From Zancudomyces culisetae HAW-14-8 (taxonomy: Eukaryota; Fungi; Kickxellomycota): a DNA stretch of 64,000 nt. Location of the stretch: assembly GCA_052426225.1 (NCBI GenBank), contig JBNJNM010000011.1, positions 3,844,001-3,908,000 of the forward strand, given 5' to 3'. Shown one piece after another: positions 13,444 through 25,167 of the stretch (position 1 is the stretch's first letter; each line of letters begins with the position of its first letter). Below the pieces are notes generated by a model. It did no database searches. It was not told the DNA's origin and saw nothing but the letters and a program-made list of their open reading frames with translations. The position numbers were made by a program, and so were the translations under genes.

Positions 13444-14301
13444 TTAGTCCTCGTTTGGGATGATAACGAGCTCATAGAGGCCAAAGCCAACAATTGCACC
13501 AACGATTGGAGCAACAATTGGATTCCAGAAATAATGGTTTGAAGCAGTGAATGGTTCGCTTCCCCATCCAGCAATTGCAGTGAAGATTCTTGGTCCAAAG
13601 TCACGGGCTGGATTGATGGCATACCCAGTGGTGGTACCAACACAGAGACCAATAGTAAACACCAACAGACCGACAGCAATAGGTGCGTATCCGTTCACGG
13701 GAGTCAATTTGGGCTCAAACATAGATCGAATGACAAACATCAGGATACCAGTGAGCAAACATTCAGTATAAAAGTTATCCCAGGTTGAGTTTTTTGGGTT
13801 GGGGTATGTGCAAAAAATTCCACCTGTGCCATAATCACCACCTACATGTAACTTACCATCTGGAGCGAATGTGTGGAATTGTGGTCTAAATACACCATAT
13901 GTGAGTGCGGCACCAAAAAAGGCACCCAAAACCTGACAAAAAATAAAGCCCGGGACCTTGATCCATGAGAAGTGGCCATAGACGGCGTTGGCGATAGTGA
14001 CTGCCGGATTCAGATGACCACCAGAAACACCCATTGAGATATACAAGGCCATAGCCAAGCCGAATCCCCACCCAAAAGTGATGATTACCCATTTGGCGGG
14101 TGCAAAGGTTTCATTAAAGGTAACAGTGGCAACTACAGTGTTACCAAAGAATAAAAGAAGTGCTGTTCCAAAAAACTCAGCCAAATATTCTCTCATTGCG
14201 TACCTCAGTCCGTAAAGAGGGAAGGCTCTTGGTGGCTTGTTGCCATTTCCCAAAGGCTCATGACTGGCAGAACCGTTCTTTTCTAAACCTGCATCAGACA
14301 T
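13444..14301 (-). CDS. Aquaglyceroporin (MIP/GlpF-like)
   Basis: AEFFGT, SGGHLNPAVT, GIFCTYP and GYAINPARDFGPR. The second NPA is followed by RD, the glyceroporin signature. Six hydrophobic segments. Confidence 0.95.
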   Translation of the reverse strand: MSDAGLEKNGSASHEPLGNGNKPPRAFPLYGLRYAMREYLAEFFGTALLLFFGNTVVATVTFNETFAPAKWVIITFGWGFGLAMALYISMGVSGGHLNPAVTIANAVYGHFSWIKVPGFIFCQVLGAFFGAALTYGVFRPQFHTFAPDGKLHVGGDYGTGGIFCTYPNPKNSTWDNFYTECLLTGILMFVIRSMFEPKLTPVNGYAPIAVGLLVFTIGLCVGTTTGYAINPARDFGPRIFTAIAGWGSEPFTASNHYFWNPIVAPIVGAIVGFGLYELVIIPNED

Positions 14302-14537
14302 TTTTCTTGATCTGTATAATTTAATCTCTTTCTTTCTCTAAAAACTGCTTTCTTTTCCTCCTTAGGTAGGATATAATGAATTTATATTAGCTGAAAGATG
14401 CTTGGATATTTTTTGGGTGTACAAGGGTATGAGGAAAAGCCGTACTATTTATATTGTTTGAGCATGAAAAAAAGGTCAGAAAAATAAAAGTAGTACTACC
14501 CTTCACGGATATATTGAGCATTCCGGTTGTTTTTCTG

Positions 14538-14569
14538 CTCTTCTATTTTTCTACTCTTCTATTTTTCTA
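14538..14569. repeat. 16-bp tandem duplication (CTCTTCTATTTTTCTA)2
   Basis: Two exact adjacent copies upstream of the aquaglyceroporin. Confidence 0.75.
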
Positions 14570-17500
14570 CTGATGCCAACATGTTTCGAAAAAGTTTAGA
14601 ACTCGAAAAAACCATTGGTATAACATCTCTCAAAACGTACATTCGAGAAAAATATTTGAGTATGTGTTTGGCCATAATTGTTAAGTAATAATGGGTATGT
14701 CCAGAATCACCAGAACCAAGACCTTAGGTAATAGTTAGCACTGTGTTTATTTGGAATTGGTATTAAGTAAGGTTGGCAAACTTTTGTAGATTCATGTATT
14801 TTTCGCTCGAACAAAAGCACCAGATCTCTAAAAAAAATTACTAATGAACAATTTTTAGTTATTTTGAGAACTTTAATTCGAATAACAAATTATAATATTA
14901 TTAAATAAAATAAATGGATTGGTAGCGATGGTGGCTTTATTATTAAACAAAAGCTAGAAAAGCCAAAAAGAACGCATTCAATTTCAGCTTGACCAGGCTT
15001 GAGGAAGGTTTAACCAAGCCAATAAGAATTATCCAAACTCAACGATTGGCGTACGAGCAATTTGTAAGGTCCGCTTTTATCTGGCTTGACCAACTTCGCA
15101 GAAAATTTTTTTTGCACAAAGCACAAATCAAAAAAAAATAAAAAGCAAATAACCATTGTGCAAAAAAAATACAAATATTGGAAGACTATTTAAAAACTAA
15201 AAAAAAAGGCCAGCACTAATACTTTTCAAAAGAGGTTTTCATTGGTTGTAAAATATGTTAACGCTTTGGTACTCGCATGATCCAGCTGCTTTTTCAGCTT
15301 CAACTTATTTGTAATGATTGGTAAAGTATTACTTTAAGTACTAAAGTACGTAATAACCTATCACTATTATCTAATTCATTATAAAAGTTAATTTATCTGT
15401 AACATCAGCTATAAAACTATTCGATGATTTACGTTTAGCGAAAACATTCCGTACATAAATAAAAAAAGTAAAGGCTTATTGGAAGCAGTTTACAGTGCAC
15501 GCATTTTATCCACTGATGTTTTTTAACTAGTCATTTTGCTGATTTCCAGATTAAAAAGGAAAATAGAAGCACTGTGTATGAGTTTATTTTATATATGTAT
15601 GCATGTGACTACGTGACTGGAAGTTGCTAAGAAGTATGTAAAACAAATACTAGATAGTGAATAGAAAGTCTGGATATTTTAAGCCGTTGAAAAAAATAAC
15701 ACACAATAGCAGTGAAATGAGCAAATAATGAACCTAGGTTACAATCTATTTGAAGAAGATATCATATAGCTTTTTTTTCACATGCTGCTTACGTAAACGT
15801 ATATAATAATAGTTACATATATGTTAGTCCACCACAACAAAGCACATGTAGACCCTACGCTACAGCACAACATATTTGTAATACCCAAAGTATCAATCAG
15901 GTCAAACCAGGTGATGGCCTGAACAAGAAATATTTAAATGAGCTGTGCTTTTGATTCCTACTGGTCTTCGGTGCCGGATGAAATTTATGTTGGTGCTTTT
16001 CTTACGCTTCCCCCCCTCTCAAGAATCAATAACTGCGCTAAATTCTAACTACTTAAACCAAAAGAACAAACCAAGGTCAGTCCAAAAATTAGATCAGCCT
16101 ATGAATTATATATCAGGGGTAAGCACTCAGCAAGAACCTGCAGTGAAACCTAATTATGCAACGAAAACACCATGGTACCACTATATTTTCTGTGTCATAA
16201 AAACGGGTAGCTTAATTTTTCCAATAGTTTATTTGAAATTTCCCCATTTAGGTTTCGTTCTGATTTAGGAAATGTTTACAACACATGCTTTTGCAATTAG
16301 GTTAGGTGAAGAAAGTCAAAGTTCCTAGAGAAAATTTATCACATGGAATTTAATACAAGCTAATTTTTATTTTTTTTAGCAAAGTGGGCTTATATCCAAA
16401 CAACTACCCGCAAAAATATTACATTCACAGTGATGCGGTAATACTGAGAATCGCCCTTGTTAATTGCGAGGTATATAGCCAAGAAAACGCAAATAAAAAA
16501 CAAAAATACTATCAGCTCGACAATAGAACTGTGATTGAAATTGGAGGGAGGATTCTTTTCGTGTATAATGGCAGCATTTGTGCTGTGGTACATCCGTTAA
16601 CACTGACTCACCTTTATTATTAGATATTATATAATTATGGGTGTATAATATGTGGTCATTTTATTCACAAGTTCATAGCATGATATAGTTTTGACAATAT
16701 TTATACTCAAAAGATTTCATAGAGATTTAGACTTTGAATTTTGAGTATGAACACAGACTTGAGTATGTGAAGGTAACTTATTGTGCATGAGTGTGTATGT
16801 TTGTAACGCTAGATAATTACATATGCTTATTCCCACAAATATTTTCTTTTTACCACTATCGGCTCTTCCAGATAAAGGTATATCGAGTATACAGAGTATG
16901 GAGTCGATGAATACAAAAATAGATCTCTTCCTCCTCCTCTTCTTCTTCCTCCATTATCCGGAACTCTCCTATAAACTAACAGATGCTTGCTACTTACACT
17001 CTCTCTTGCAATTAGCCGATTAAATAGTTCAATATCAGTATAATTTTCTGTACTGGTTGGGTTGAGAGTCCAAAATAAAACAAAATGCAATAAATCTTGG
17101 AAATTCAACTATAATCTCCTCGATTTATTGCCCATCAGGTTATGGCACAGAAAAATGGCAGAGTGTAGACATCAAATGAGGCAGTTTGGATAAGAAAAAG
17201 CAACCCATTTGCCGTTCTTGGGTAAAATAAAGTTGCGGTGGTTTATTTCTGAAATTACCATTATATTATCTAGCTATCTCTTTTCTAAAAAATTGTCATC
17301 AGCGTAAAGATGAGTAGTTACTATTGATTATTGTTCAGCTATTGATGGACAAGGTCCAAAGCTTCTTATGTCTAGCATTCGAGTCGAACACTAAACGTCC
17401 TATACACACATTATGATTACTATTACTATAAGGAGAGTGCTATTGTATTAGAAGACATTTACTAGGTTCTGCAATGTTACCATAATTACAGAAATTAGGA

Positions 17501-17594
17501 CCAAACCTTCAACTTTTATTGATTTTATTCCTGTTTTAACAACTAATCTAAAGCAACAGGACAAAAAAAAAAGATAGTCATGTGACTTTATGGC

Positions 17595-17747
17595 GAAAAA
17601 ATTTTTTTTATTGATCTGTCTCGGTCTGGTACCTGTTTGGCTGGATTTCCTACCTCTGCTTTTCTTTTTATTAGGTTTTGATGTAAAATATCTGAATGTA
17701 ATTGGCAACTACAGTTAAAACACACAGAAAAAAAATTTTTTTTTTCA
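17595..17747. promoter_or_regulatory. Two RRPE-like A-tract/T-tract elements upstream of IMP4
   Basis: GAAAAAATTTTTTTT at 17595-17609 and GAAAAAAATTTTTTTTTTTCA at 17727-17747, 85-240 bp before a ribosome-biogenesis gene. Confidence 0.45.
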
Positions 17748-17831
17748 GTAAAGGTGAAATAAATGGACAACAATAAGAAAAGAGCTAGAAACTAGTAGTT
17801 AGAAATTGTAAAAAGTAGTCCTTGAATAAAA

Positions 17832-18792
17832 ATGCTGAAGCGACAGAATAGATTAAGACGTGAGTATTTGTACAAGAAAAGCGTACAGGAGCAACAGGCG
17901 ACCAAAGATGCTCAAAAAAAGCGTGAGAAGGTGGGACAGATTCTGGAGGAGGGTAAACCAAAGTCGCTCATGTCAAATCAGGAACTAAAAGAGGCACGAG
18001 ATGTTATTAAAAACTTAGCACTTGACCGTGTGCAGCACGATGTGAACGATATTGATGATGAATATCTAAAGGCGGGTGTATATGATCCGAAAGTTGTGAT
18101 TACAACATCACGAGATCCAAGCTCACGTCTTCAGCAATTTGCCAAGGAAATGAGGTTAATCGTTCCGAATTCACAACGAATTAATAGAGGAAACTACGTA
18201 ATTAAAGATCTAGTAGAGACATGCCGAACAAATGAAGTAACTGATCTTGTAATCATCCACGAGCATCGCGGCGAACCTGACGGACTAATTGTCAGCCACT
18301 TGCCGTACGGACCAACAGTATTTTTCACATTGTACAACGTGGTTCTGAGACATGATATCAAAAACGTGGGAAACATGTCAGAGGCGTATCCACATTTAAT
18401 TATGGATAAGTTTAGCAGCAAGCTGGGCAAACGGATCGAAAAGGTACTGAAACATCTATTTCCTGTTCCAAAGGAGGACTCAAAGCGCGTCATGACGTTT
18501 GCCAATCAAAGTGATTTTATCTCATTTCGGTAAGTGAGCAAGTTTTTTCTAAACTCTTTAATTAACACATTGTGTAAATAAATCAATATAATTAACCATA
18601 TAAATGTGTACTGCTAGGCATCATGTATATGTAAAAACAAGTCATAAAAGTGTCGAGTTAGCAGAGGTTGGACCACGATTTGAAATGCGGCCCTATGAGA
18701 TCAAACTGGGAACGATCGATAATCCAGATTCTCAAACCGAATGGGTGCTGCGAAGCTATATGCGTACCAGTAGAAAACGCGATCAACTCTAA
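17832..18792 (+). CDS. IMP4: U3 snoRNP protein Imp4 (Brix domain), 2 exons
   Basis: Exon 1 17832-18529, GTAAGT..TAG intron 18530-18617, exon 2 18618-18792. Motifs MLKRQNRLRREYLY, DPKVVITTSRDPSSRL, HEHRGEPDGL, HLPYGPT, DFISFRHH and ELAEVGPRFEM. Confidence 0.97.
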
Positions 18793-20552
18793 TACGAGGG
18801 ATAGGGGTAGCATTTCAGGTCAAAGAACGAAGGTGGAAATCCAAAGTCTACTCCAAATGCGGCAGCCGAGGCATATGTTTTGTTATGTGAACGCACAAAT
18901 TTGTATAGAGGTGTGGAGAGGTTTGATGAGCCGCAGAAAAAAACACCAATAGATGCACCCGGGTGTACACACGCTAGATTAGGCAATATTTTTGCAAAGT
19001 TCGGGCGGCCATAGTATGTTGGGCAGCTACAGGTGAAGCCGGTGATGGTTTCTGTTTCAGCATCCATTTCTGTTGCCGTTGCTGTATCATCCATAATATG
19101 ATCATGCTCGTGATCATGCTCATTCAGGACGACTTGTCTTATTTGCAGTGGGCTTAAATTTTCTTGCGTCAAATATATTTGAATACTTATAAATGGATTG
19201 CTCGTGTTAGTTTTAAGTTTTGTCATTTCTTCCTCAATCTCTTGCAATTGGTGCGTGATCCACTCAAATCCACTAGACCTACCCTGTGTCTTTGTCCACA
19301 CAAAATATACTCGTCTTAATCTTTGGGAGTATCCTGGTCGCGTGTACTGCAGCCATAGCGATTTGATTACGGATATGAGAGGCACCGCTCCGCTATCCTC
19401 AGCCACCAACAACGCCACATCGTATTTAGTCATATCTGCTTGATCTACCACACCAGCTCCAAATGGCCCATCAACAACTAGCCCCGGAAGTCTGAACCTA
19501 CTCAATTTAATCTTCATCTTCTCATTATCATCGACCATGTTCACCCCAGCTCCCACCAGTCGACATAACCTACCTGTCCATCTGCCTACCGCACGCATGT
19601 GTATTGTCATGACCTCCTCCTCTGGTGCCGATGTCAATGTGAATGGATGCCACTCATTTACTGATACTTCCGGACAGTTGACCAATACGTATTGCCCTGC
19701 AACGTGTTTCTTTTTTGCCTTCATTTGTATCTCTACAACTCTGTTTGGGTGAAGTACAACCTTGCTGATCCGCACCTTTCGTACTGACTGTATCTGCCGC
19801 ATTATTCTCTCCAGTAAATATATGACTGCGGGGCCCAAAATATACTTCCATGTTGATCCACTTCTTCTGCAATACGGCGGTGTATCAGTCTTGTACATGC
19901 AAAACGACCCATGAACCAACATAATCCCAATCACTATATACTTTATTTTGTCTACGTAACCAATTATCCTATAATTGTCTGTTTTACGCAACCACCACAT
20001 CACTACCCCTACTAAAACCATCATCAACGTCATAATATGCCCCGTCACCGATGCCCCATTTTTCATCAGCATTTCCATAAACTGTTTACCATTTTTTTCT
20101 GCTTTCTGATATAGTACCACGTATTGCGCCACAATATGCGCTGCCCCAACCACCACCACAGTCCACATCATCTTTCTGCGTAGCTTTTTGCCACCATCAT
20201 TTCCCACCACGTATTCCTTTATCCATTTTCCAATACTGTTCTTCATTGTACATAGTTTGCTTAGTGTTAGCTTGCACTCCAGGAAAATCAGCATTGCCAC
20301 AAATACTTGTATTATCATTGCCGTTCCTTGTCCAAATACGAACCACTTTCCATGCTGGCTTCGCTCCCCTTCCCACACTTTCTCCTTTGCATATATCTCG
20401 ATTGCTGCCACTTTGATTCCAACCAACAGCCCGATCCATAGTAGCGTCATCATCCACGCCTTACCCTCAACTCTGATCCATCCAACCACTCTCCGATGCA
20501 ACCTGGTCGTACCTTTTTTGCTTGAAAATATGTTGCTATTGTTTTTTATCAT
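18789..20552 (-). CDS. NADPH oxidase (NoxB/gp91phox-like) homolog with degenerate catalytic motifs
   Basis: TM region with TGHIM and LVHGSFCM, FAD motifs EWHPFTLTSAPEE and HMRAVG, plus VDGPFG, TYYGRPNF and GVFFCG. 587-aa uninterrupted ORF; see findings for the lost residues. Confidence 0.88.
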   Translation of the reverse strand: MIKNNSNIFSSKKGTTRLHRRVVGWIRVEGKAWMMTLLWIGLLVGIKVAAIEIYAKEKVWEGERSQHGKWFVFGQGTAMIIQVFVAMLIFLECKLTLSKLCTMKNSIGKWIKEYVVGNDGGKKLRRKMMWTVVVVGAAHIVAQYVVLYQKAEKNGKQFMEMLMKNGASVTGHIMTLMMVLVGVVMWWLRKTDNYRIIGYVDKIKYIVIGIMLVHGSFCMYKTDTPPYCRRSGSTWKYILGPAVIYLLERIMRQIQSVRKVRISKVVLHPNRVVEIQMKAKKKHVAGQYVLVNCPEVSVNEWHPFTLTSAPEEEVMTIHMRAVGRWTGRLCRLVGAGVNMVDDNEKMKIKLSRFRLPGLVVDGPFGAGVVDQADMTKYDVALLVAEDSGAVPLISVIKSLWLQYTRPGYSQRLRRVYFVWTKTQGRSSGFEWITHQLQEIEEEMTKLKTNTSNPFISIQIYLTQENLSPLQIRQVVLNEHDHEHDHIMDDTATATEMDAETETITGFTCSCPTYYGRPNFAKILPNLACVHPGASIGVFFCGSSNLSTPLYKFVRSHNKTYASAAAFGVDFGFPPSFFDLKCYPYPSY

Positions 20553-21526
20553 TTTTTAGTACTATTTGCCAATATCTTGTATTATCCAACTAGATAAACA
20601 TTCTGACTTTTATGCCTCTTCTTGTTACTTTTTTTTCAAAAACTTCATTTCCTAGATTAATATAGCTATTTCATTGCCTTTATTGCTAACAACCATCATG
20701 CCCCTATAATCTGTAAATGCTAAATCCTGTTTTCCATTGGAGTTTGCCTACATTCAACAATCAAATTCCAATTGTCCTCAACAATCACTTCGATTTCCCA
20801 ATTGCTCGTTAATCCACCTCTTCAAAATTTTTTTTCCTTTCTTACTTTTTTTTGTGGTAAATGGATTTATGATGGCCTTTTCAAAAGCTCAGAGATTCTT
20901 GTTTACTTAGCTATTCATTATAGATTTTCTTTTCCTCAAGTTTATATAAACTTGACCATATTTTACCTTCATACCTAAATAATGGGATTTTACCATTAAC
21001 GATATGGCAAAAGTAAAAAAACCGGAGTATACTACAGAGCCTTACATCCCTATTTTGTTGGATGCAACCATTTTGCATGTTACTCGTTTTCTCTTTTTTT
21101 ATCGTTTTACTTGGTTTGACAACCCCTTCTTACTCTTTCTCTTGGATAAAAGTTCACACTTTCAATACCACTATATCCCGCAATAAAAGGTATGTGTAGT
21201 TATTCCTGTACTCATCCAGTGACCAAACTTTGCTCCTGTTCCCGCAAATCTGAGCTCTGGGGCTTTTCGACCAAATAAAAAAATTTTATCCATATCTTTT
21301 TTTTTTGATTGTGATTTGATTTTTCTGCCTGAAGTTAACCAACGAAATTCAACCTATAGCTGAGACACTTTTGCTCATCAAAGTTGATTTTCCAGTTCCT
21401 ATATTTCAATACAATACAATACAACACAGATACAAATAATATCAAAAACAGATTCTACATTTTAACAAAACTTTCACGTGGTCCAAGGAGCTGTACTAGA
21501 ACAGAAAAAAAATCCTCATCACCAAA

Positions 21527-22391
21527 ATGCCTTCCTTTACTAGTTCGATGGATCATCGTCGCGCATTACTGCGCAATCTTACCACCTCATTGATCAAACA
21601 TGGCCGCATAGAAACCACAGTCGCAAAAGCCAAAGAAGTCCGACGTCACGTTGAACGAGTAAGTAAATCCCCCCTCCCTCCCACATTTTTCTGCTTTCGA
21701 ACTACTGGACGGTTGTGGTTTTAGTCGTTGTAATTCAGTATAAAATGTAAAATCGCTTTTTCCGAATGATCGCTCTTGATCTTTGTGTAAACGAATAATG
21801 AAAAAATAGATGATTACAATTGCAAAACAAGATAACCCACATACAAGGCACCTCGTTTCAAAATGGATGTTCGAGCCGACTACCACAATGCCTATCCTCT
21901 TCGACCAGCTGGGAAAACGCTTTGCGGATCGACCTGGGGGCTACACCCGTATGCACAAAATCGGATTTCGTCATAATGATCGTGCTCCGATAGCCGTCAT
22001 CGAAATTCTTAAAACTGACATGCCCGACTCCGATCTTGGTTTTAAATTAACACTACGCAAGTTGGCGGCAGCCCAAATACAGCAGAACACAACCGGAAAT
22101 AGCAAAATTGTGGACCAAATCTTGGCCTCGATTCAAAACGTTGAAGATAGTAGCAACCAGGAAGATGGAAGCTCGCCATTTACACGCGACCTTCCACGAA
22201 CGGACAAATTCACTTTTAAAAAGGCTGTAAACATACGCCGTAGGGACCATCGCTTTGCAGTAAAAGTTTCCAAGCTCCTCAAAAACTACAATCTTACTGC
22301 TGGACAACTTCAAGAACAAGTTGATTTGGAATGTAACAATCTATCCGGTTTGTCATTATCTACATCGGCTTCTACTCAACCAACTAACTAA
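21527..22391 (+). CDS. MRPL17: Mitochondrial ribosomal protein bL17m, 2 exons (start uncertain)
   Basis: Exon 1 21527-21658 ([28 protein letters not shown]), GTAAGT..TAG intron 21659-21809, exon 2 with [12 protein letters not shown] and DRAPIAVIE. Confidence 0.9.
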
Positions 22392-22727
22392 CCACCCCTT
22401 ATACTCGTGATTTGTTTGGTTAGTTCATCAAGTTTATAGCATTGAGTTTGAAGAATTACTTTATTTTTTAGCTCATAGCTCTTTACATTGTTTAACTTGA
22501 ATTACTAGAAATTTACATTATTTTACTTTTTTGGTACTCTCGATGCCCATAAATGTTGTTTATATCTACCCAGGTACATTAATACGTGGTGAAGAGATAC
22601 CTTATGGCCTGTTGTAGTCAAAGCTAAGTCCAACTATCAATTTTCTGATTTACATACAAAATACAGTCTATAAACCAACGGGTAAACTATGATTACATTA
22701 AATGACTCTAAAAGAAACCAGAACAAG

Positions 22728-24431
22728 TTAATAAAGTTCAAAAACCGCTACGCATATCTCATAAACCACCTTGTATATATTTGTCACAAGCAATGGGAGA
22801 TAGAACACAGTAGCAACATACATGTATGTGTATACAAGTGGACTGTTTATGTGTGATTGCGAAAAAAAAATAAATAAGGGTGATATAGCCGTGTTCAATA
22901 TATCTATGATACCCCCTGTGTGAGTATTTAATCTTCGAGACGTATGGCGCTGATACCAACGGTCACTTTGGGGTTGACGTCGAGCTCGCATATCAGCACA
23001 TCCGCTATGATAATATGCAACTGGGCTATTTAGCTCGCGATTTAGACATCCGTCAACAACATTACCATCACCGCCAATATCTGCACGTCTTTTTCGTCGT
23101 TTGCCTGTCCTGTGTTTGGTCTGCTGTTGATAAGCTACCCCATTTATCTTAGCAACTGTTTTAAATATATCCCCAACGTTGTAAAAATCAACACACACAA
23201 AGTTAACTTGTTGAGCATGCGTCATCTCGCCATACTTGCTCTTGGTACTAGTGTTAGTGTTATTGGAATCTGGACTATTAGTTGCTTGTTTTATTAGTGC
23301 TACATGTTTCTGAATGTTTTCTTCAGAATTTACTTGCGCTGCAGATTCTCTAGTCGGTATTCCTCCATGATGGAAACCACCGATTTTTAGCGGCCTTGAT
23401 ACAAAATGGTTTAGTGTAATCAAGCCTTTTCCATTACCATAGGTTTCCGACGTAAATTCTTGACCCACAAACACTTCAAAGCTGGTGTATCTCTCAAAAA
23501 TGCCTATTGGAATTATCCTATTAAATTTTGTCTTTTGTTATTCAGCAGCTATTTCTACCACCGAAGATACGGAGTTTGATAAATAATTAGTTGGAACTCA
23601 CATAGGGTACTTTTCAAATTCGTCACTATCAATATCTGATGAAAACACAAGCAGTCTTTTATTACTCACGATTAATTCACGCAGCTTTGGCCACGCAAAT
23701 TTCGAATCCGGCGTCAGAATGTTTCTTGTATCGTTTATGTAGTACATGTGGTTTTCCAGATTTGCGTACACAAAGTCCTTATATATCCGCCTGGATGCAA
23801 ACTTGTCAAAGTTTTCCAATAATATCGTAACTATTTCTCCTGGGTTTGTGTCAAGAAATTGGTGGATTGCAACTAGTGTATCTGTAAAATAGCCAGCATC
23901 CAGAATTGTGCATCTGGTATGACATAACTTGATATTTACCAGGTCTTGACTATTATCACCATCACCATCACCATCACCACTATCGCTTTCAATGGCGTTA
24001 GGATTAGCGTCAGTGTTGATAACAACAAGCTTTCCGTTGGAACTCTTTTTTTTTATAGTTCCCACTGGTGCGTGTAAGTCTAAGGCCAATACTCTGATTC
24101 CGTCATGAAGCTGCCTTGATATTAAGCACTCTTGGTTAGCTCCGATATTATAAGCACCAACTGCAAACGAATTGTGTGAACATGGGTATGACACTTGGTT
24201 GTACCTTAATTCACAGAGTTCGGTATACCCATTGCATTTTATTTGAGCACTTCCTGCCTCCGCTGCGTGTGTACCATCATCTATTGCAGATAGTGCTAAC
24301 GCAGGTTTGCTACTGCTACAACTTGTAAAAATTATTGTGCTCGCTAATAGCAGTATCACAGCCTCCACAAGACAGCGTAGTGTGGTTTTGTTATTATTGA
24401 AGTTACCAGTACCTGGAAAAATATGCAACAT
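22728..24431 (-). CDS. Secreted PLC-like phosphodiesterase (PI-PLC X domain-like), 2 exons
   Basis: Exon 1 24431-23602, GTGAGT..TAG intron 23601-23518, exon 2 23517-22728. Motifs CNGYTELC, SHNSFA, NQ..QLHDGIR, LCHTRC, FLDTNPGEIVTILLEN, LNHF and NFVCVDFYNVG. C-terminal extent is less certain. Confidence 0.85.
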
Positions 24432-25167
24432 TTTCGATTCCTGTCTTGGATATTTCGGGATAGTGCAGGAAATAACACAGGCGTTTTTTTATTTTGCACA
24501 AAAAGGGATCGGCGGGAAAATGTAGTTTAAGTGCTATCTGTATTTGAAAGTACTTAACATATTACATTTATATACCATCTTACCCAGGTTTTTATACTGG
24601 CCTTTATAATTTGTATTATCTCATTTCTCAAAATCATCATGTTATAAACGTATTTGCTAAGCTATTCAATGGGCAAAGTTGGCTAAAAATGTAAATTTTT
24701 ATTTCCTATAACACCATGGGTCTGATTTATAGTATAACTAACTATCACCCATTTCGAACTTTCTAGTGTGCCTGTTTATTAATTTTTTGAACCTTCATGT
24801 ACTCCAAAATAGTAGTAAGTGTAAAAAGTCTCGTATGCTCAACTTCAAGTTATTCATACTGAATGTATATGAAATTCTAGAGAAACTAATAGCATGCAGA
24901 GCAAAAAAAAGCAATAAATATTACATCAATCTTACGTTGATGCATGTGTAAAAAAAAGTGATACCAGCCAAATGCTCGATGTTTATACACATCAACCCGC
25001 ATGTTCATATTTTTTAGGAAAGAAACAATAATTGATCACTTCTGATGACCAGGGCCAGTGTTTTTGAATGAATTTTCTTTATTCCGTTTCAAAAGTTAGA
25101 ATGAAACACGGGCTGTTGGCTATTTACATCCAATTATCAAAAGTAAAAAATAAATAGTTGTGCATTA

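What the first reader, a model, noticed from the sequence alone, without database searches (positions are those of the whole stretch)
18789..20552. Full-length NoxB-like protein with a dismantled electron path: candidate pseudo-oxidase
Seen: an intact, intronless 587-aa ORF that aligns end to end with fungal NoxB/gp91phox. Established: NOX2 uses H101/H209 for the inner heme, H115/H222 for the outer heme, a GAGIGVTPF loop for NADPH and a terminal Phe (..KENF). Here the H101 position reads KLRRK (about 20171-20190) and the H209/H210 position reads GYVDK (about 19945-19960), so both ligands of the same heme are lost. The outer-heme pair is kept (AHIVAQ, LVHG). The NADPH loop has become LVAEDSGAVPL (about 19380-19410) with acidic residues, and the C-terminus ends KCYPYPSY. 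FAD motifs are preserved. Inference: coordinated loss of one heme and NADPH binding with no stop or frameshift in 1.76 kb suggests a retained non-catalytic role (Nox regulator or partner, one-heme sensor) or a different electron donor.
Basis: partly seen in the sequence, partly recalled or inferred. Interest (0 to 1): 0.8.

Follow-up and report, generated by a model that had tools for sequence, protein, structure and literature searches.

The report
Disabled NADPH oxidase copy kept by selection
A mosquito-gut fungus (Zancudomyces culisetae) carries, beside a normal NADPH oxidase gene, a fast-evolved second copy that has lost one haem site, the oxygen site and the NADPH loop, yet stays intact and looks selected in two strains, so it is probably a working non-oxidase protein rather than a dead gene.

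Summary
The NADPH loop reads A-E-D-S-G-A-V-P-L.

Further losses were found. The O2-site pair R54/H119 is Gln/Gln, CGP is CGS, and 10 residues follow the normally terminal Phe.

The genome is Zancudomyces culisetae (Harpellales). A canonical NOX lies on the same contig. The divergent copy branches with Harpellales NOX on a terminal branch about 15 times the median. No orthologue appeared among 1.84 billion protein representatives. Among 274 aligned relatives it alone lacks both inner-haem histidines.

It is not a decaying pseudogene:
- A stop-free frame has chance about 3e-18.
- The 2016 assembly of another strain holds the same ORF with 7 synonymous and 4 non-synonymous differences (pN/pS 0.16, P=0.003) and no indels.
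- The FAD subdomain is significantly the best conserved part.

Best reading: a selected pseudo-oxidase. Arg at the H101 position matches the STEAP/YedZ single-haem signature, which keeps a one-haem alternative alive. Expression and biochemistry are untested.

The parts
18789..20552 (-). Complete intronless CDS of the divergent NOX paralogue (587 aa plus a TAG stop at 18789-18791)
   Evidence: ORF list. End-to-end alignment with fungal NOX. The same ORF is intact in the older assembly, L013:4173-5936.
19884..20552 (-). Ferric-reductase-type transmembrane domain (residues 1-223), strongly diverged
   Evidence: Pfam Ferric_reduct scores only E=0.0022, below the cut-off. The domain was not found by the PF01794 genome scan. 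The word search on region 1-225 found nothing. Hydrophobic segments are kept at the positions of TM1-TM5. AF2 pLDDT is mostly 77-96 there. Only 18 of 43 family-conserved columns are kept.
20178..20180 (-). R125, at the position of inner-haem ligand H101 of NOX2 (within KLRRK, 20172-20186)
   Evidence: The column is His in 277 of 278 other rows that cover it. Arg at this position is the STEAP/YedZ signature (PMC3591440).
19947..19952 (-). D201-K202, at the positions of H209 (inner-haem ligand) and H210 of NOX2
   Evidence: The H209 column is His in all 302 other rows that cover it.
20136..20138 (-). H139, the outer-haem ligand (NOX2 H115), kept
   Evidence: Invariant column.
19911..19913 (-). 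H214, the outer-haem ligand (NOX2 H222), kept
   Evidence: Invariant column.
20328..20330 (-). Q75, at the position of NOX2 R54 (O2-site / haem-propionate Arg), lost
   Evidence: Gap-free phmmer register. The column is R or K in 262 of 267 other rows that cover it.
20124..20126 (-). Q143, at the position of NOX2 H119 (NOX-specific distal His), lost
   Evidence: H119 is one of the four NOX signature positions (PMC3591440).
20040..20045 (-). T170-G171 = NOX2 T178-G179, the NOX signature dipeptide in TM4, kept
   Evidence: Signature defined in PMC3591440.
19455..19778 (-). FAD-binding subdomain (Pfam FAD_binding_8, residues 259-366), including HPFT at 19638-19649 and GPFG at 19458-19469. This is the best conserved part.
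   Evidence: In the FAD block used for the count (residues 224-370), 42 of 52 conserved columns are kept. Fisher P=1.5e-4 against the rest.
18897..19424 (-). NAD(P)H-binding subdomain (Pfam NAD_binding_6, residues 377-552), fold kept but binding motifs eroded
   Evidence: In the NAD block used for the count (residues 371-587), 35 of 64 conserved columns are kept.
19377..19403 (-). Degenerate NADPH loop A-E-D-S-G-A-V-P-L in place of G-A-G-I-G-V-T-P-F. D386 (19395-19397) sits at the NOX2 G410 position.
   Evidence: The G410 column is Gly in 310 of 316 other rows that cover it.
18927..18941 (-). FFCGS in place of FFCGP (NOX2 P539 position is Ser)
19050..19121 (-). His/Asp/Glu-rich 24-residue stretch (EHDHEHDH...DAETE, residues 478-501). 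About 17 of its residues are an insertion absent from relatives, in the variable loop of the NAD subdomain. It is predicted to be disordered.
   Evidence: Insertion relative to all aligned NOX. pLDDT 59-61.
18792..18821 (-). 10-residue C-terminal extension (residues 578-587) after the Phe that is the last residue of canonical NOX
   Evidence: pLDDT below 50.
18790..18792 (+). TAA stop of the convergent IMP4 gene, overlapping the NOX-like TAG stop by 2 nt
   Evidence: Translation of 18501-18830.

Best explanation
This is a lineage-specific, very fast-evolved paralogue of the Harpellales NADPH oxidase in Zancudomyces culisetae. It is kept by purifying selection but can no longer carry electrons from NADPH through two haems to O2. 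I read it as a NOX-derived pseudo-enzyme, a 'pseudo-oxidase'.

Shown:
- The NOX fold and three-domain architecture are kept.
- Both ligands of the cytosolic-side haem are replaced by charged residues, and the surrounding inner half of TM5 is rewritten.
- The O2-site Arg and His are both Gln.
- The glycine-rich NADPH loop carries Glu-Asp.
- The C-terminus is extended beyond the FAD-capping Phe.
- The FAD subdomain and the two outer-haem His are kept.
- The ORF is intact and depleted in non-synonymous differences between two strains.

Inferred:
- The protein still folds in the membrane and probably still binds FAD and possibly one haem, as structural or sensing cofactors.
- It acts without transmembrane electron transfer, most plausibly by binding partners that it shares with the canonical oxidase, or as a membrane scaffold or sensor.
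- With the inner haem gone, FAD and the outer haem would lie too far apart for useful tunnelling unless another cofactor fills the pocket. This rests on established knowledge of NOX structures and electron-tunnelling limits. It was not measured here.
For: Architecture and fold:
- Pfam domains.
- NOX2 at 1.5e-56.
- AF2 model with pLDDT 84 and pTM 0.79. Foldseek's top hit is NOX2 8wej_B with TM-score 0.71.

Lost catalytic positions, in one register from four alignments. Among 274 relatives that cover all four haem-His columns, only this protein lacks both inner ligands.

A canonical paralogue with every motif lies on the same contig. It keeps 151 of 159 conserved columns, against 95 of 159 for this protein.

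Origin: the protein groups with Harpellales NOX (94/97 in the careful tree; 85). Its terminal branch is 4.25-4.97 substitutions per site against a median of 0.28.

Selection:
- The probability of no stop in 587 codons at this composition is 3e-18. Shuffles give 17 or more stops.
- The older Z. culisetae assembly has the same ORF with 7 synonymous and 4 non-synonymous differences. pN/pS is 0.16, binomial P=0.0033, with no indels in the ORF while flanking DNA has them.
- The FAD subdomain is significantly better conserved than the rest.

No closer relative than 34-36% identity was found in 1.84 billion representatives.
Against: - No expression evidence. The one public run found holds only a 225-nt contig of unknown library type.
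- The selection test rests on 11 differences between two assemblies, presumably two strains.
- No orthologue is known, so long-term dN/dS cannot be computed.
- Binding of FAD or haem is inferred from kept residues only. Keeping 2 of 4 His is compatible with the 42% general retention in the TM domain.
- K421 and R425 lie near the lost 2'-phosphate Arg position, and the first Gly of the loop is Ala in plant FNR as well. Some nucleotide binding therefore cannot be excluded.
- The AF2 model leans on an alignment of canonical NOX.
- No partner was identified. There is no p22phox Pfam hit and NoxR was not confirmed.
Confidence: 0.6

Rival explanations
1. It is a one-haem redox protein with another electron source, a NOX-lineage protein that converged on the STEAP/YedZ layout. 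The outer haem is kept. The former inner-haem pocket, now lined by R125, R126, K127, D201, K202 and K204, would bind a flavin or another anionic cofactor. Electrons would come from a donor other than NADPH bound in the usual way, such as a partner reductase, free reduced flavin, or the canonical NOX.
For: - H101->Arg with H115 and H222 kept is exactly the signature that separates YedZ/STEAP from other FRD proteins (PMC3591440).
- In STEAP4 the Arg at that position (R290, 14 residues before the haem ligand H304) binds the FAD phosphates, and the flavin ring sits where NOX has its inner haem (PMC6194020). Here R125 is likewise 14 residues before H139.
- The FAD subdomain, HPFT and the Cys-Gly of the CGP motif are kept.
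- The T178/G179 dipeptide is kept.
Against: - The TM5 position is Asp, not the conserved Gln of STEAP/YedZ.
- The protein is phylogenetically a NOX, not a STEAP.
- The O2/substrate-side residues R54 and H119 are also lost.
- There is no evidence for any cofactor in the pocket.
- The basic residues may simply sit at the membrane-cytosol boundary.
- Keeping the two outer His is not statistically remarkable.
Confidence: 0.15
2. It is a non-functional relic: a gene that lost its function and is not expressed, or was inactivated too recently to show stops.
For: - About 40% of family-conserved residues are replaced.
- The terminal branch is about 15 times the median.
- Amino-acid and codon composition are shifted in the direction of a strand bias that also covers the upstream non-coding DNA. 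G3 is 0.31, T3 is 0.22, Met is 4.6% and Val is 10%.
- No RNA evidence.
- The 2016 annotation called only a 134-aa fragment.
Against: - A 587-codon open frame after more than 4 substitutions per site has a chance of about 3e-18 under neutrality.
- 60% of highly conserved columns are still kept, and non-randomly by domain.
- Two strains share the intact frame with 7 synonymous and 4 non-synonymous differences and no indel.
Confidence: 0.17
3. It is still a working NADPH (or NADH) oxidase or ferric reductase that uses alternative haem ligands (for example M128/M129, K202, Y205) and a variant nucleotide loop.
For: - The overall fold, HPFT, GPFG, the Cys-Gly of the CGP motif, G412 and P415 equivalents and T178/G179 are kept.
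- Met residues lie one turn from R125.
- Basic residues K421 and R425 lie near the lost 2'-phosphate Arg.
Against: - Five independent functional sites are hit at once: the inner-haem pair, R54, H119, G410->Asp with a neighbouring Glu, and the C-terminal cap.
- All 302 other family rows that cover the H209 column have His there, and 277 of 278 have His at H101.
- CGD-type changes in these motifs abolish NOX2 activity (established knowledge, not tested here).
Confidence: 0.06

Closest known systems
Human NOX2 (gp91phox / cytochrome b-245 heavy chain) and fungal NoxA/NoxB-type oxidases
   Same: - Same 6-TM ferric-reductase domain plus FAD plus NAD(P)H dehydrogenase architecture and length.
- The dehydrogenase domain matches at 1.5e-56. 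The predicted fold has TM-score 0.71 to 8wej_B.
- HPFT, GPFG, the outer-haem His pair and the T178/G179 dipeptide are kept.
- It branches inside the fungal NOX clade with Harpellales.
   Different: - The inner-haem ligands H101/H209 are R/D.
- H210 is K, R54 is Q and H119 is Q.
- The NADPH loop is A-E-D-S-G-A-V-P-L.
- CGP is CGS.
- A 10-residue tail follows the terminal Phe.
- The TM domain falls below the Pfam threshold.
- The branch is about 15 times longer.
STEAP1-4 and bacterial YedZ/MsrQ (single-haem members of the ferric-reductase-domain superfamily)
   Same: The cytosolic-side haem ligands are lost while the outer pair is kept. Arg sits at the H101 position, 14 residues before the outer-haem His of TM3, as with R290/H304 in STEAP4 (PMC3591440; PMC6194020).
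   Different: - It is not related by descent. This protein is a NOX with a C-terminal FNR-type dehydrogenase domain. STEAPs have an N-terminal F420-type oxidoreductase domain or none.
- The TM5 position is Asp, not Gln.
- No evidence for a membrane-inserted flavin.
NOX in-paralogues lacking single signature residues (for example Dictyostelium NoxC without H119, and green-algal preNOX without one TM3 His; Zhang et al. 2013, PMC3591440)
   Same: They are extra NOX copies with lost signature residues, in species that also keep a canonical copy.
   Different: Those lack one position. Here the inner-haem pair, the O2 site and the NADPH loop are all changed.
Other fast-evolving fungal NOX paralogues with an acidic NADPH loop: Globomyces pollinis-pini KAI8899190.1 (P0262), Rozella allomycis EPZ31007.1 (P0321), and two proteins from Logan assemblies (P0209, P0241)
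   Same: Asp or Glu sits at the NOX2 G410 position of the NADPH loop. Three of them were placed on the tree, and those have long terminal branches.
   Different: - Three of them (P0209, P0241, P0262) keep all four haem His. The Rozella model covers only the last of the four positions.
- Two of them have lost the HPFT His, which this protein keeps.
- They do not group with each other or with this protein on the tree, so the origins are independent.

Membership tests
Catalytic NADPH oxidase (NOX1-4 / fungal NoxA-B type) | Architecture: 6-TM ferric-reductase domain + FAD-binding + NAD(P)H-binding subdomains | tested here: met
   - Pfam FAD_binding_8 and NAD_binding_6 are above their cut-offs. Ferric_reduct is below its cut-off.
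- The AF2 model and the Foldseek match to NOX2 cover the whole length.
Catalytic NADPH oxidase (NOX1-4 / fungal NoxA-B type) | Four haem-ligating His (NOX2 H101, H115, H209, H222) | tested here: not met
   The protein reads R125, H139, D201, H214. Only the outer pair is kept.
Catalytic NADPH oxidase (NOX1-4 / fungal NoxA-B type) | NOX signature H101, H119, T178, G179 (Zhang et al. 2013) | tested here: not met
   The protein reads R125, Q143, T170, G171, so 2 of 4 are kept.
Catalytic NADPH oxidase (NOX1-4 / fungal NoxA-B type) | O2-site Arg (NOX2 R54) | tested here: not met
   Q75.
Catalytic NADPH oxidase (NOX1-4 / fungal NoxA-B type) | FAD motif HPFT and conserved FAD subdomain | tested here: met
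   H302-P-F-T is present, and 42 of 52 conserved columns are kept.
Catalytic NADPH oxidase (NOX1-4 / fungal NoxA-B type) | Glycine-rich NADPH loop G-x-G-x-G-x-x-P and the CGP motif | tested here: not met
   The loop is A-E-D-S-G-A-V-P-L, with the G410 equivalent as Asp. CGP is CGS.
Catalytic NADPH oxidase (NOX1-4 / fungal NoxA-B type) | Chain ends at the FAD-capping Phe (..ENF) | tested here: not met
   A Phe is alignable (F577), but 10 residues follow it.
Catalytic NADPH oxidase (NOX1-4 / fungal NoxA-B type) | Descent from the NOX clade | tested here: met
   It branches with Harpellales NOX.
Catalytic NADPH oxidase (NOX1-4 / fungal NoxA-B type) | NADPH-dependent superoxide production | not testable with these tools
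   This needs a biochemical assay.
STEAP / YedZ single-haem ferric-reductase-domain proteins | First haem-spanning His (H101) replaced by a conserved Arg, outer His pair kept | tested here: met
   R125, H139 and H214. Signature from PMC3591440.
STEAP / YedZ single-haem ferric-reductase-domain proteins | Gln at the TM5 inner position | tested here: not met
   D201.
STEAP / YedZ single-haem ferric-reductase-domain proteins | Descent from the YedZ/STEAP clade; no C-terminal FNR-type dehydrogenase domain | tested here: not met
   It is a NOX by phylogeny and has the dehydrogenase domain.
STEAP / YedZ single-haem ferric-reductase-domain proteins | Flavin bound in the inner membrane pocket | not testable with these tools
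   No coordinates or cofactor modelling were available.
Pseudo-enzyme (selected, catalytically disabled homologue) | Catalytic or cofactor residues of the active family lost | tested here: met
Pseudo-enzyme (selected, catalytically disabled homologue) | Maintained by purifying selection | tested here: met
   - Intact frame, with chance probability 3e-18.
- 7 synonymous and 4 non-synonymous differences between two assemblies, P=0.0033, and no indels.
- The sample is small.
Pseudo-enzyme (selected, catalytically disabled homologue) | Expressed | tested here: inconclusive
   Only one run was found, with a 225-nt contig of unknown library type.
Unitary pseudogene | Stops, frameshifts, or neutral substitution pattern | tested here: not met
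   There are none in either assembly, and pN/pS is 0.16.

The most novel reading that the evidence does not exclude
A protein of the NOX lineage has independently rebuilt itself into a STEAP-like single-haem ferric-reductase-domain protein. The cytosolic haem pocket (R125/R126/K127, D201/K202/K204) would now hold a flavin or another anionic cofactor. Electrons would enter from a donor other than NADPH bound in the classical site. That would be a second, convergent origin of single-haem transmembrane electron transfer in eukaryotes. Together with the independently acidified NADPH loops in chytrid, Rozella-type and ascomycete-related NOX paralogues, it would point to a recurrent class of re-purposed NOX proteins in fungi.
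Probability: 0.12. Interest if true: 0.85.

Novelty: new variant of a known kind. Interest (0 to 1): 0.56.

Why it matters
NADPH oxidases are usually treated as enzymes whose only job is to make reactive oxygen. Two literature searches in the held paper library found no described NOX pseudo-enzyme.

Here a NOX paralogue has lost one haem site, the oxygen site and the NADPH loop, yet appears to be kept by selection. That gives a natural test case for functions of the NOX scaffold that do not depend on electron transfer, such as partner binding, sensing or membrane organisation.

It also bears on how the single-haem STEAP/YedZ layout can arise from a two-haem ancestor, because the same His-to-Arg change has occurred. 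The host organism is a culturable gut symbiont of vector mosquitoes with a new reference genome and transcriptome, so expression and biochemistry can be tested directly.

The independent acidic-loop NOX paralogues seen in other early-diverging fungi suggest that the phenomenon may be recurrent.

Tried and rejected
- **Expression.** The look-up of sequencing runs found one run with 9% of the words. Read laying (4,001 letters, within the operators' limit) showed a single 225-nt contig at 19818-20042 with one difference. This says nothing about expression.
- **Orthologues.** The whole-protein word search gave at best 31-34% identity. The TM-region search found nothing. The exact look-up found nothing. 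Exhaustive phmmer gave at best 34-36% identity apart from the protein's own 134-aa fragment model. Unannotated orthologues in other Harpellales genomes could not be searched, because the genome tools cover only bacteria, archaea and this assembly.
- **dN/dS against the paralogue.** Not attempted, because synonymous sites are saturated at 34% amino-acid identity.
- **Foreign origin.** Rejected, because the protein branches with Harpellales NOX.
- **A shared 'acidic-loop' subfamily.** Rejected, because those proteins do not group together.
- **Partners.** There is no hit to p22phox Pfam PF05038. The PB1 scan gave Cdc24-like, Bem1-like and CBS-PB1 proteins plus one PB1-only 517-aa ORF with no PDB match, so NoxR is not confirmed.
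- **Complex prediction.** Not used. No binding claim is made.
- **R125-D201 salt bridge.** It could not be measured, because model coordinates are not exposed.
- **Discarded run.** One search had an indexing error caused by trimmed alignment ends. It is replaced.
- **Strand composition bias.** It was examined as an explanation for the divergence. It is real and extends into the upstream non-coding DNA. It does not explain the intact frame or the domain-specific conservation.
Full report
**What is there**

window:18789-20552 on the minus strand is one uninterrupted 587-codon ORF. Pfam finds the two dehydrogenase subdomains of the NOX/ferric-reductase family: NAD_binding_6 at 7e-18 and FAD_binding_8 at 2e-15. 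The transmembrane Ferric_reduct model reaches only E=0.0022, below its curated cut-off.

phmmer against all PDB chains gives human NOX2 at 1.5e-56 through residues 224-557. The N-terminal part aligns without significance of its own, but gap-free. That alignment gives this register:
- Q75 = R54
- R125 = H101
- H139 = H115
- Q143 = H119
- T170/G171 = T178/G179
- D201 = H209
- K202 = H210
- H214 = H222

The same register comes out of three other alignments: a MAFFT alignment with 10 fungal NOX, one with 87, and an hmmalign of 322 family members to a profile that excludes the query. An AlphaFold2 model built on the 88-row alignment is confident (pLDDT 84, pTM 0.79). It matches NOX2 over its whole length (8wej_B, TM-score 0.71). 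That model leans on canonical homologues.

**What is lost and what is kept**

There are 159 alignment columns that are at least 90% conserved in 87 fungal NOX. The protein keeps 95 of them. By domain it keeps 18 of 43 in the TM domain, 42 of 52 in the FAD subdomain and 35 of 64 in the NAD subdomain. The FAD subdomain is significantly better kept than the rest (Fisher P=1.5e-4).

Lost features:
- Both ligands of the cytosolic-side haem are gone (H101->R, H209->D), and so is the neighbouring H210 (->K).
- The aromatic lining of the inner half of TM5 is rewritten (F197I, W198G, L203I, F204K, F208I).
- The O2-site Arg and distal His are both Gln (R54->Q75, H119->Q143).
- PxCRN is changed.
- The NADPH loop reads A-E-D-S-G-A-V-P-L, with Asp at the NOX2 G410 position.
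- The Arg-Asp after the second strand is not conserved, although K421 and R425 lie nearby, so I do not count that as a clear loss.
- CGP is CGS.
- Ten residues follow the Phe that ends every canonical NOX.

Kept features:
- the two outer-haem His;
- the T178/G179 dipeptide;
- HPFT and GPFG;
- the Cys-Gly of the CGP motif;
- the G412 and P415 equivalents.

A His/Asp/Glu-rich stretch (478-501), about 17 residues of it an insertion absent from relatives, and the C-terminal tail are predicted to be disordered.

Among 274 family rows that cover all four haem-His columns, only two deviate. One is this protein (R-H-D-H). The other is a 399-aa Olpidium fragment (N-H-H-H).

**Whose gene it is**

The assembly has 27.1 Mb in 25 contigs. 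A second NOX gene on the same contig (G000:C11:73965-75575) has every canonical motif. It is 100% identical to an NCBI protein of Zancudomyces culisetae. Its first exon and a short intron lie just upstream of the long ORF, so the gene is complete.

The window gene itself exists in the 2016 annotation only as a 134-aa fragment model (OMH81915.1, 'Respiratory burst oxidase-like protein'). Z. culisetae is a culturable hindgut symbiont of mosquito and black-fly larvae. Two strains have been sequenced: COL-18-3 (Illumina, 2016) and HAW-14-8 (HiFi, 27.8 Mb in 26 contigs, with a transcriptome) (PMC12611240). That the window comes from the second strain is an inference from size and contig number.

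**Where it comes from**

In maximum-likelihood trees the protein falls with Harpellales NOX. Support is 99 for Kickxellales plus Harpellales in the quick tree. The careful tree gives 94/97 for Harpellales alone, and the tree with added long-branch sequences gives 85.

Its terminal branch is 4.25-4.97 substitutions per site, against a median of 0.28. Its amino-acid make-up departs from the family. It is therefore a paralogue that arose within or at the base of Harpellales and then evolved about 15 times faster than its relatives. NoxA versus NoxB identity is not resolved.

No orthologue turned up in any search:
- The word search gives at most 31-34% identity.
- The TM region alone finds nothing.
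- An exhaustive phmmer scan of 1.84 billion cluster representatives gives 34-36% at best, apart from the protein's own fragment model.

Unannotated copies in other Harpellales genomes could not be searched with these tools.

**Dead or alive**

Three arguments speak against a decaying pseudogene.

First, at this base composition a stop-free frame of 587 codons has probability about 3e-18. 2,000 shuffles gave 17 or more stops, and the other five frames carry 13-51 stops. A sequence that has taken more than 4 substitutions per amino-acid site could not stay open without selection.

Second, what has been kept is not random. The best-kept part is the FAD subdomain.

Third, the older assembly (LSSK01000783.1, fetched as L013) is 99.3% identical over 10.3 kb and carries the same intact ORF. 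The 11 differences are 7 synonymous and 4 non-synonymous (I111L, A138V, T175A, D192G, all in the TM domain). This gives pS 0.018, pN 0.0029 and pN/pS 0.16. The binomial probability of 4 or fewer non-synonymous changes out of 11 is 0.0033. There are no indels in the ORF, while flanking non-coding DNA has several.

The sample is small, but sequencing error would not favour synonymous sites. Expression remains untested. The single public run that holds any of the sequence has one 225-nt contig of unknown library type.

**How it most likely works**

A canonical NOX passes electrons from NADPH to FAD, then to the inner haem, then to the outer haem, then to O2. Here the entry (NADPH loop), the middle (inner haem) and the exit (R54/H119) are all altered. 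NADPH-driven superoxide production is therefore very unlikely. This is inference from family knowledge, since changes in these motifs inactivate human NOX2.

The kept FAD subdomain and outer-haem ligands suggest that FAD, and possibly one haem, are still bound. I rate a selected, non-electron-transferring 'pseudo-oxidase' as most likely (0.6). It could act as a scaffold, as a partner or decoy for components shared with the canonical oxidase, or as a sensor.

I could not identify partners. There is no p22phox Pfam hit. Cdc24-like and Bem1-like PB1 proteins exist, but a NoxR was not confirmed.

The pairing of the two lost His is biologically sensible but not statistically telling. With 42% retention in the TM domain, and two of four His lost, a same-haem pair is expected one time in three.

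**The interesting alternative**

Zhang et al. (PMC3591440) showed that YedZ and STEAP proteins are set apart from all other ferric-reductase-domain proteins. In them the H101 position is a conserved Arg and the H209 position is Gln, with only the outer haem kept. The STEAP4 structure (PMC6194020) shows that this Arg (R290, 14 residues before haem ligand H304) binds the FAD phosphates. It also shows that the flavin ring occupies the place of the inner haem.

The window protein has Arg at exactly that position, 14 residues before H139. Its former pocket is now lined by five basic residues and one acidic residue. This is convergence in a NOX-lineage protein, not membership. The TM5 residue is Asp, and the protein is a NOX by descent and domain order. 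I give a STEAP-like one-haem mechanism with another electron source 0.15.

**A wider pattern, noticed in passing**

In the 322-protein alignment, four other NOX-family proteins carry Asp or Glu at the G410 position of the NADPH loop:
- Globomyces pollinis-pini KAI8899190.1
- a Rozella allomycis model
- two proteins from Logan assemblies

Three of these were placed on the tree. They keep all four haem His, sit on long branches, and group with different fungal NOX clades rather than with each other or with this protein. The Rozella model covers only the last of the four haem positions. Acidification of the NADPH loop in fast-evolving NOX paralogues thus seems to have happened several times.

**Verdict**

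The gene is a new variant of a known kind: a NOX-derived candidate pseudo-enzyme, unique among the relatives examined in having lost the inner-haem pair.

It is a single-species case without expression or biochemical data, so I score interest at 0.56. Two literature searches in the held library found no described NOX pseudo-enzyme. That is absence in that library only.

Noticed in passing
window 18789-18792: The stop codons of the convergent IMP4 gene (TAA 18790-18792, plus strand, after an intron at about 18531-18616) and of the NOX-like gene (TAG 18789-18791, minus strand) overlap by 2 nt. Each gene's 3' UTR must therefore run antisense through the other's coding region.
   Followed up: yes
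L002:1426-3240 (G000:C11:73890-75704): The canonical NOX of this genome is complete: exon 1 from the ATG at L002:3240, a short GT..AG intron, then the long ORF. In the 2016 annotation it appears only as a truncated 383-aa model ('Cytochrome', P0121). The window gene likewise appears only as a 134-aa fragment (OMH81915.1).
   Followed up: partly
P0209, P0241, P0262 (Globomyces pollinis-pini KAI8899190.1), P0321 (Rozella allomycis EPZ31007.1): These are other fungal NOX-family proteins with Asp or Glu at the NOX2 G410 position of the NADPH loop. Two have also lost the HPFT His or the Cys of the CGP motif. The three placed on the tree sit on long branches, keep all four haem His and do not form a clade.
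   Followed up: partly
window 19250-21650: There is a strong G-over-C skew on the minus strand (down to -0.47 on the plus strand). It runs from the middle of the ORF through about 1.1 kb of upstream non-coding DNA. The ORF has the highest G3 (0.31), lowest T3 (0.22) and highest Met and Val content of 15 long ORFs in the window. The cause is unknown; it may be transcription-linked bias.
   Followed up: partly
window 19050-19121: A 24-residue His/Asp/Glu-rich stretch (EHDHEHDH...), about 17 residues of it an insertion absent from relatives, lies in the variable loop of the NAD subdomain and is predicted to be disordered. It may bind metal.
   Followed up: no
window 13644-24686 versus L013: The older Z. 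culisetae assembly differs from this one by about 0.5-0.7% across 11 kb, with 101 differing alignment columns including indel columns in non-coding parts. This fits two distinct isolates and is useful for pN/pS tests on any gene of this genome.
   Followed up: partly
L014, L015, L016, L017: The PB1-domain genes of the genome are a Cdc24-like protein (RhoGEF-PH-PB1), a Bem1-like protein (SH3-SH3-PB1), a CBS-PB1 protein, and a 517-aa ORF with only a C-terminal PB1 and no PDB match. The last is a possible but unconfirmed NoxR.
   Followed up: partly
window 19818-20042: One small public run (41 million letters, library type not on record) holds a 225-nt contig of this gene at depth 29 with one difference, and nothing else within window 17800-21800, the only stretch laid. 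Its origin is unexplained.
   Followed up: no
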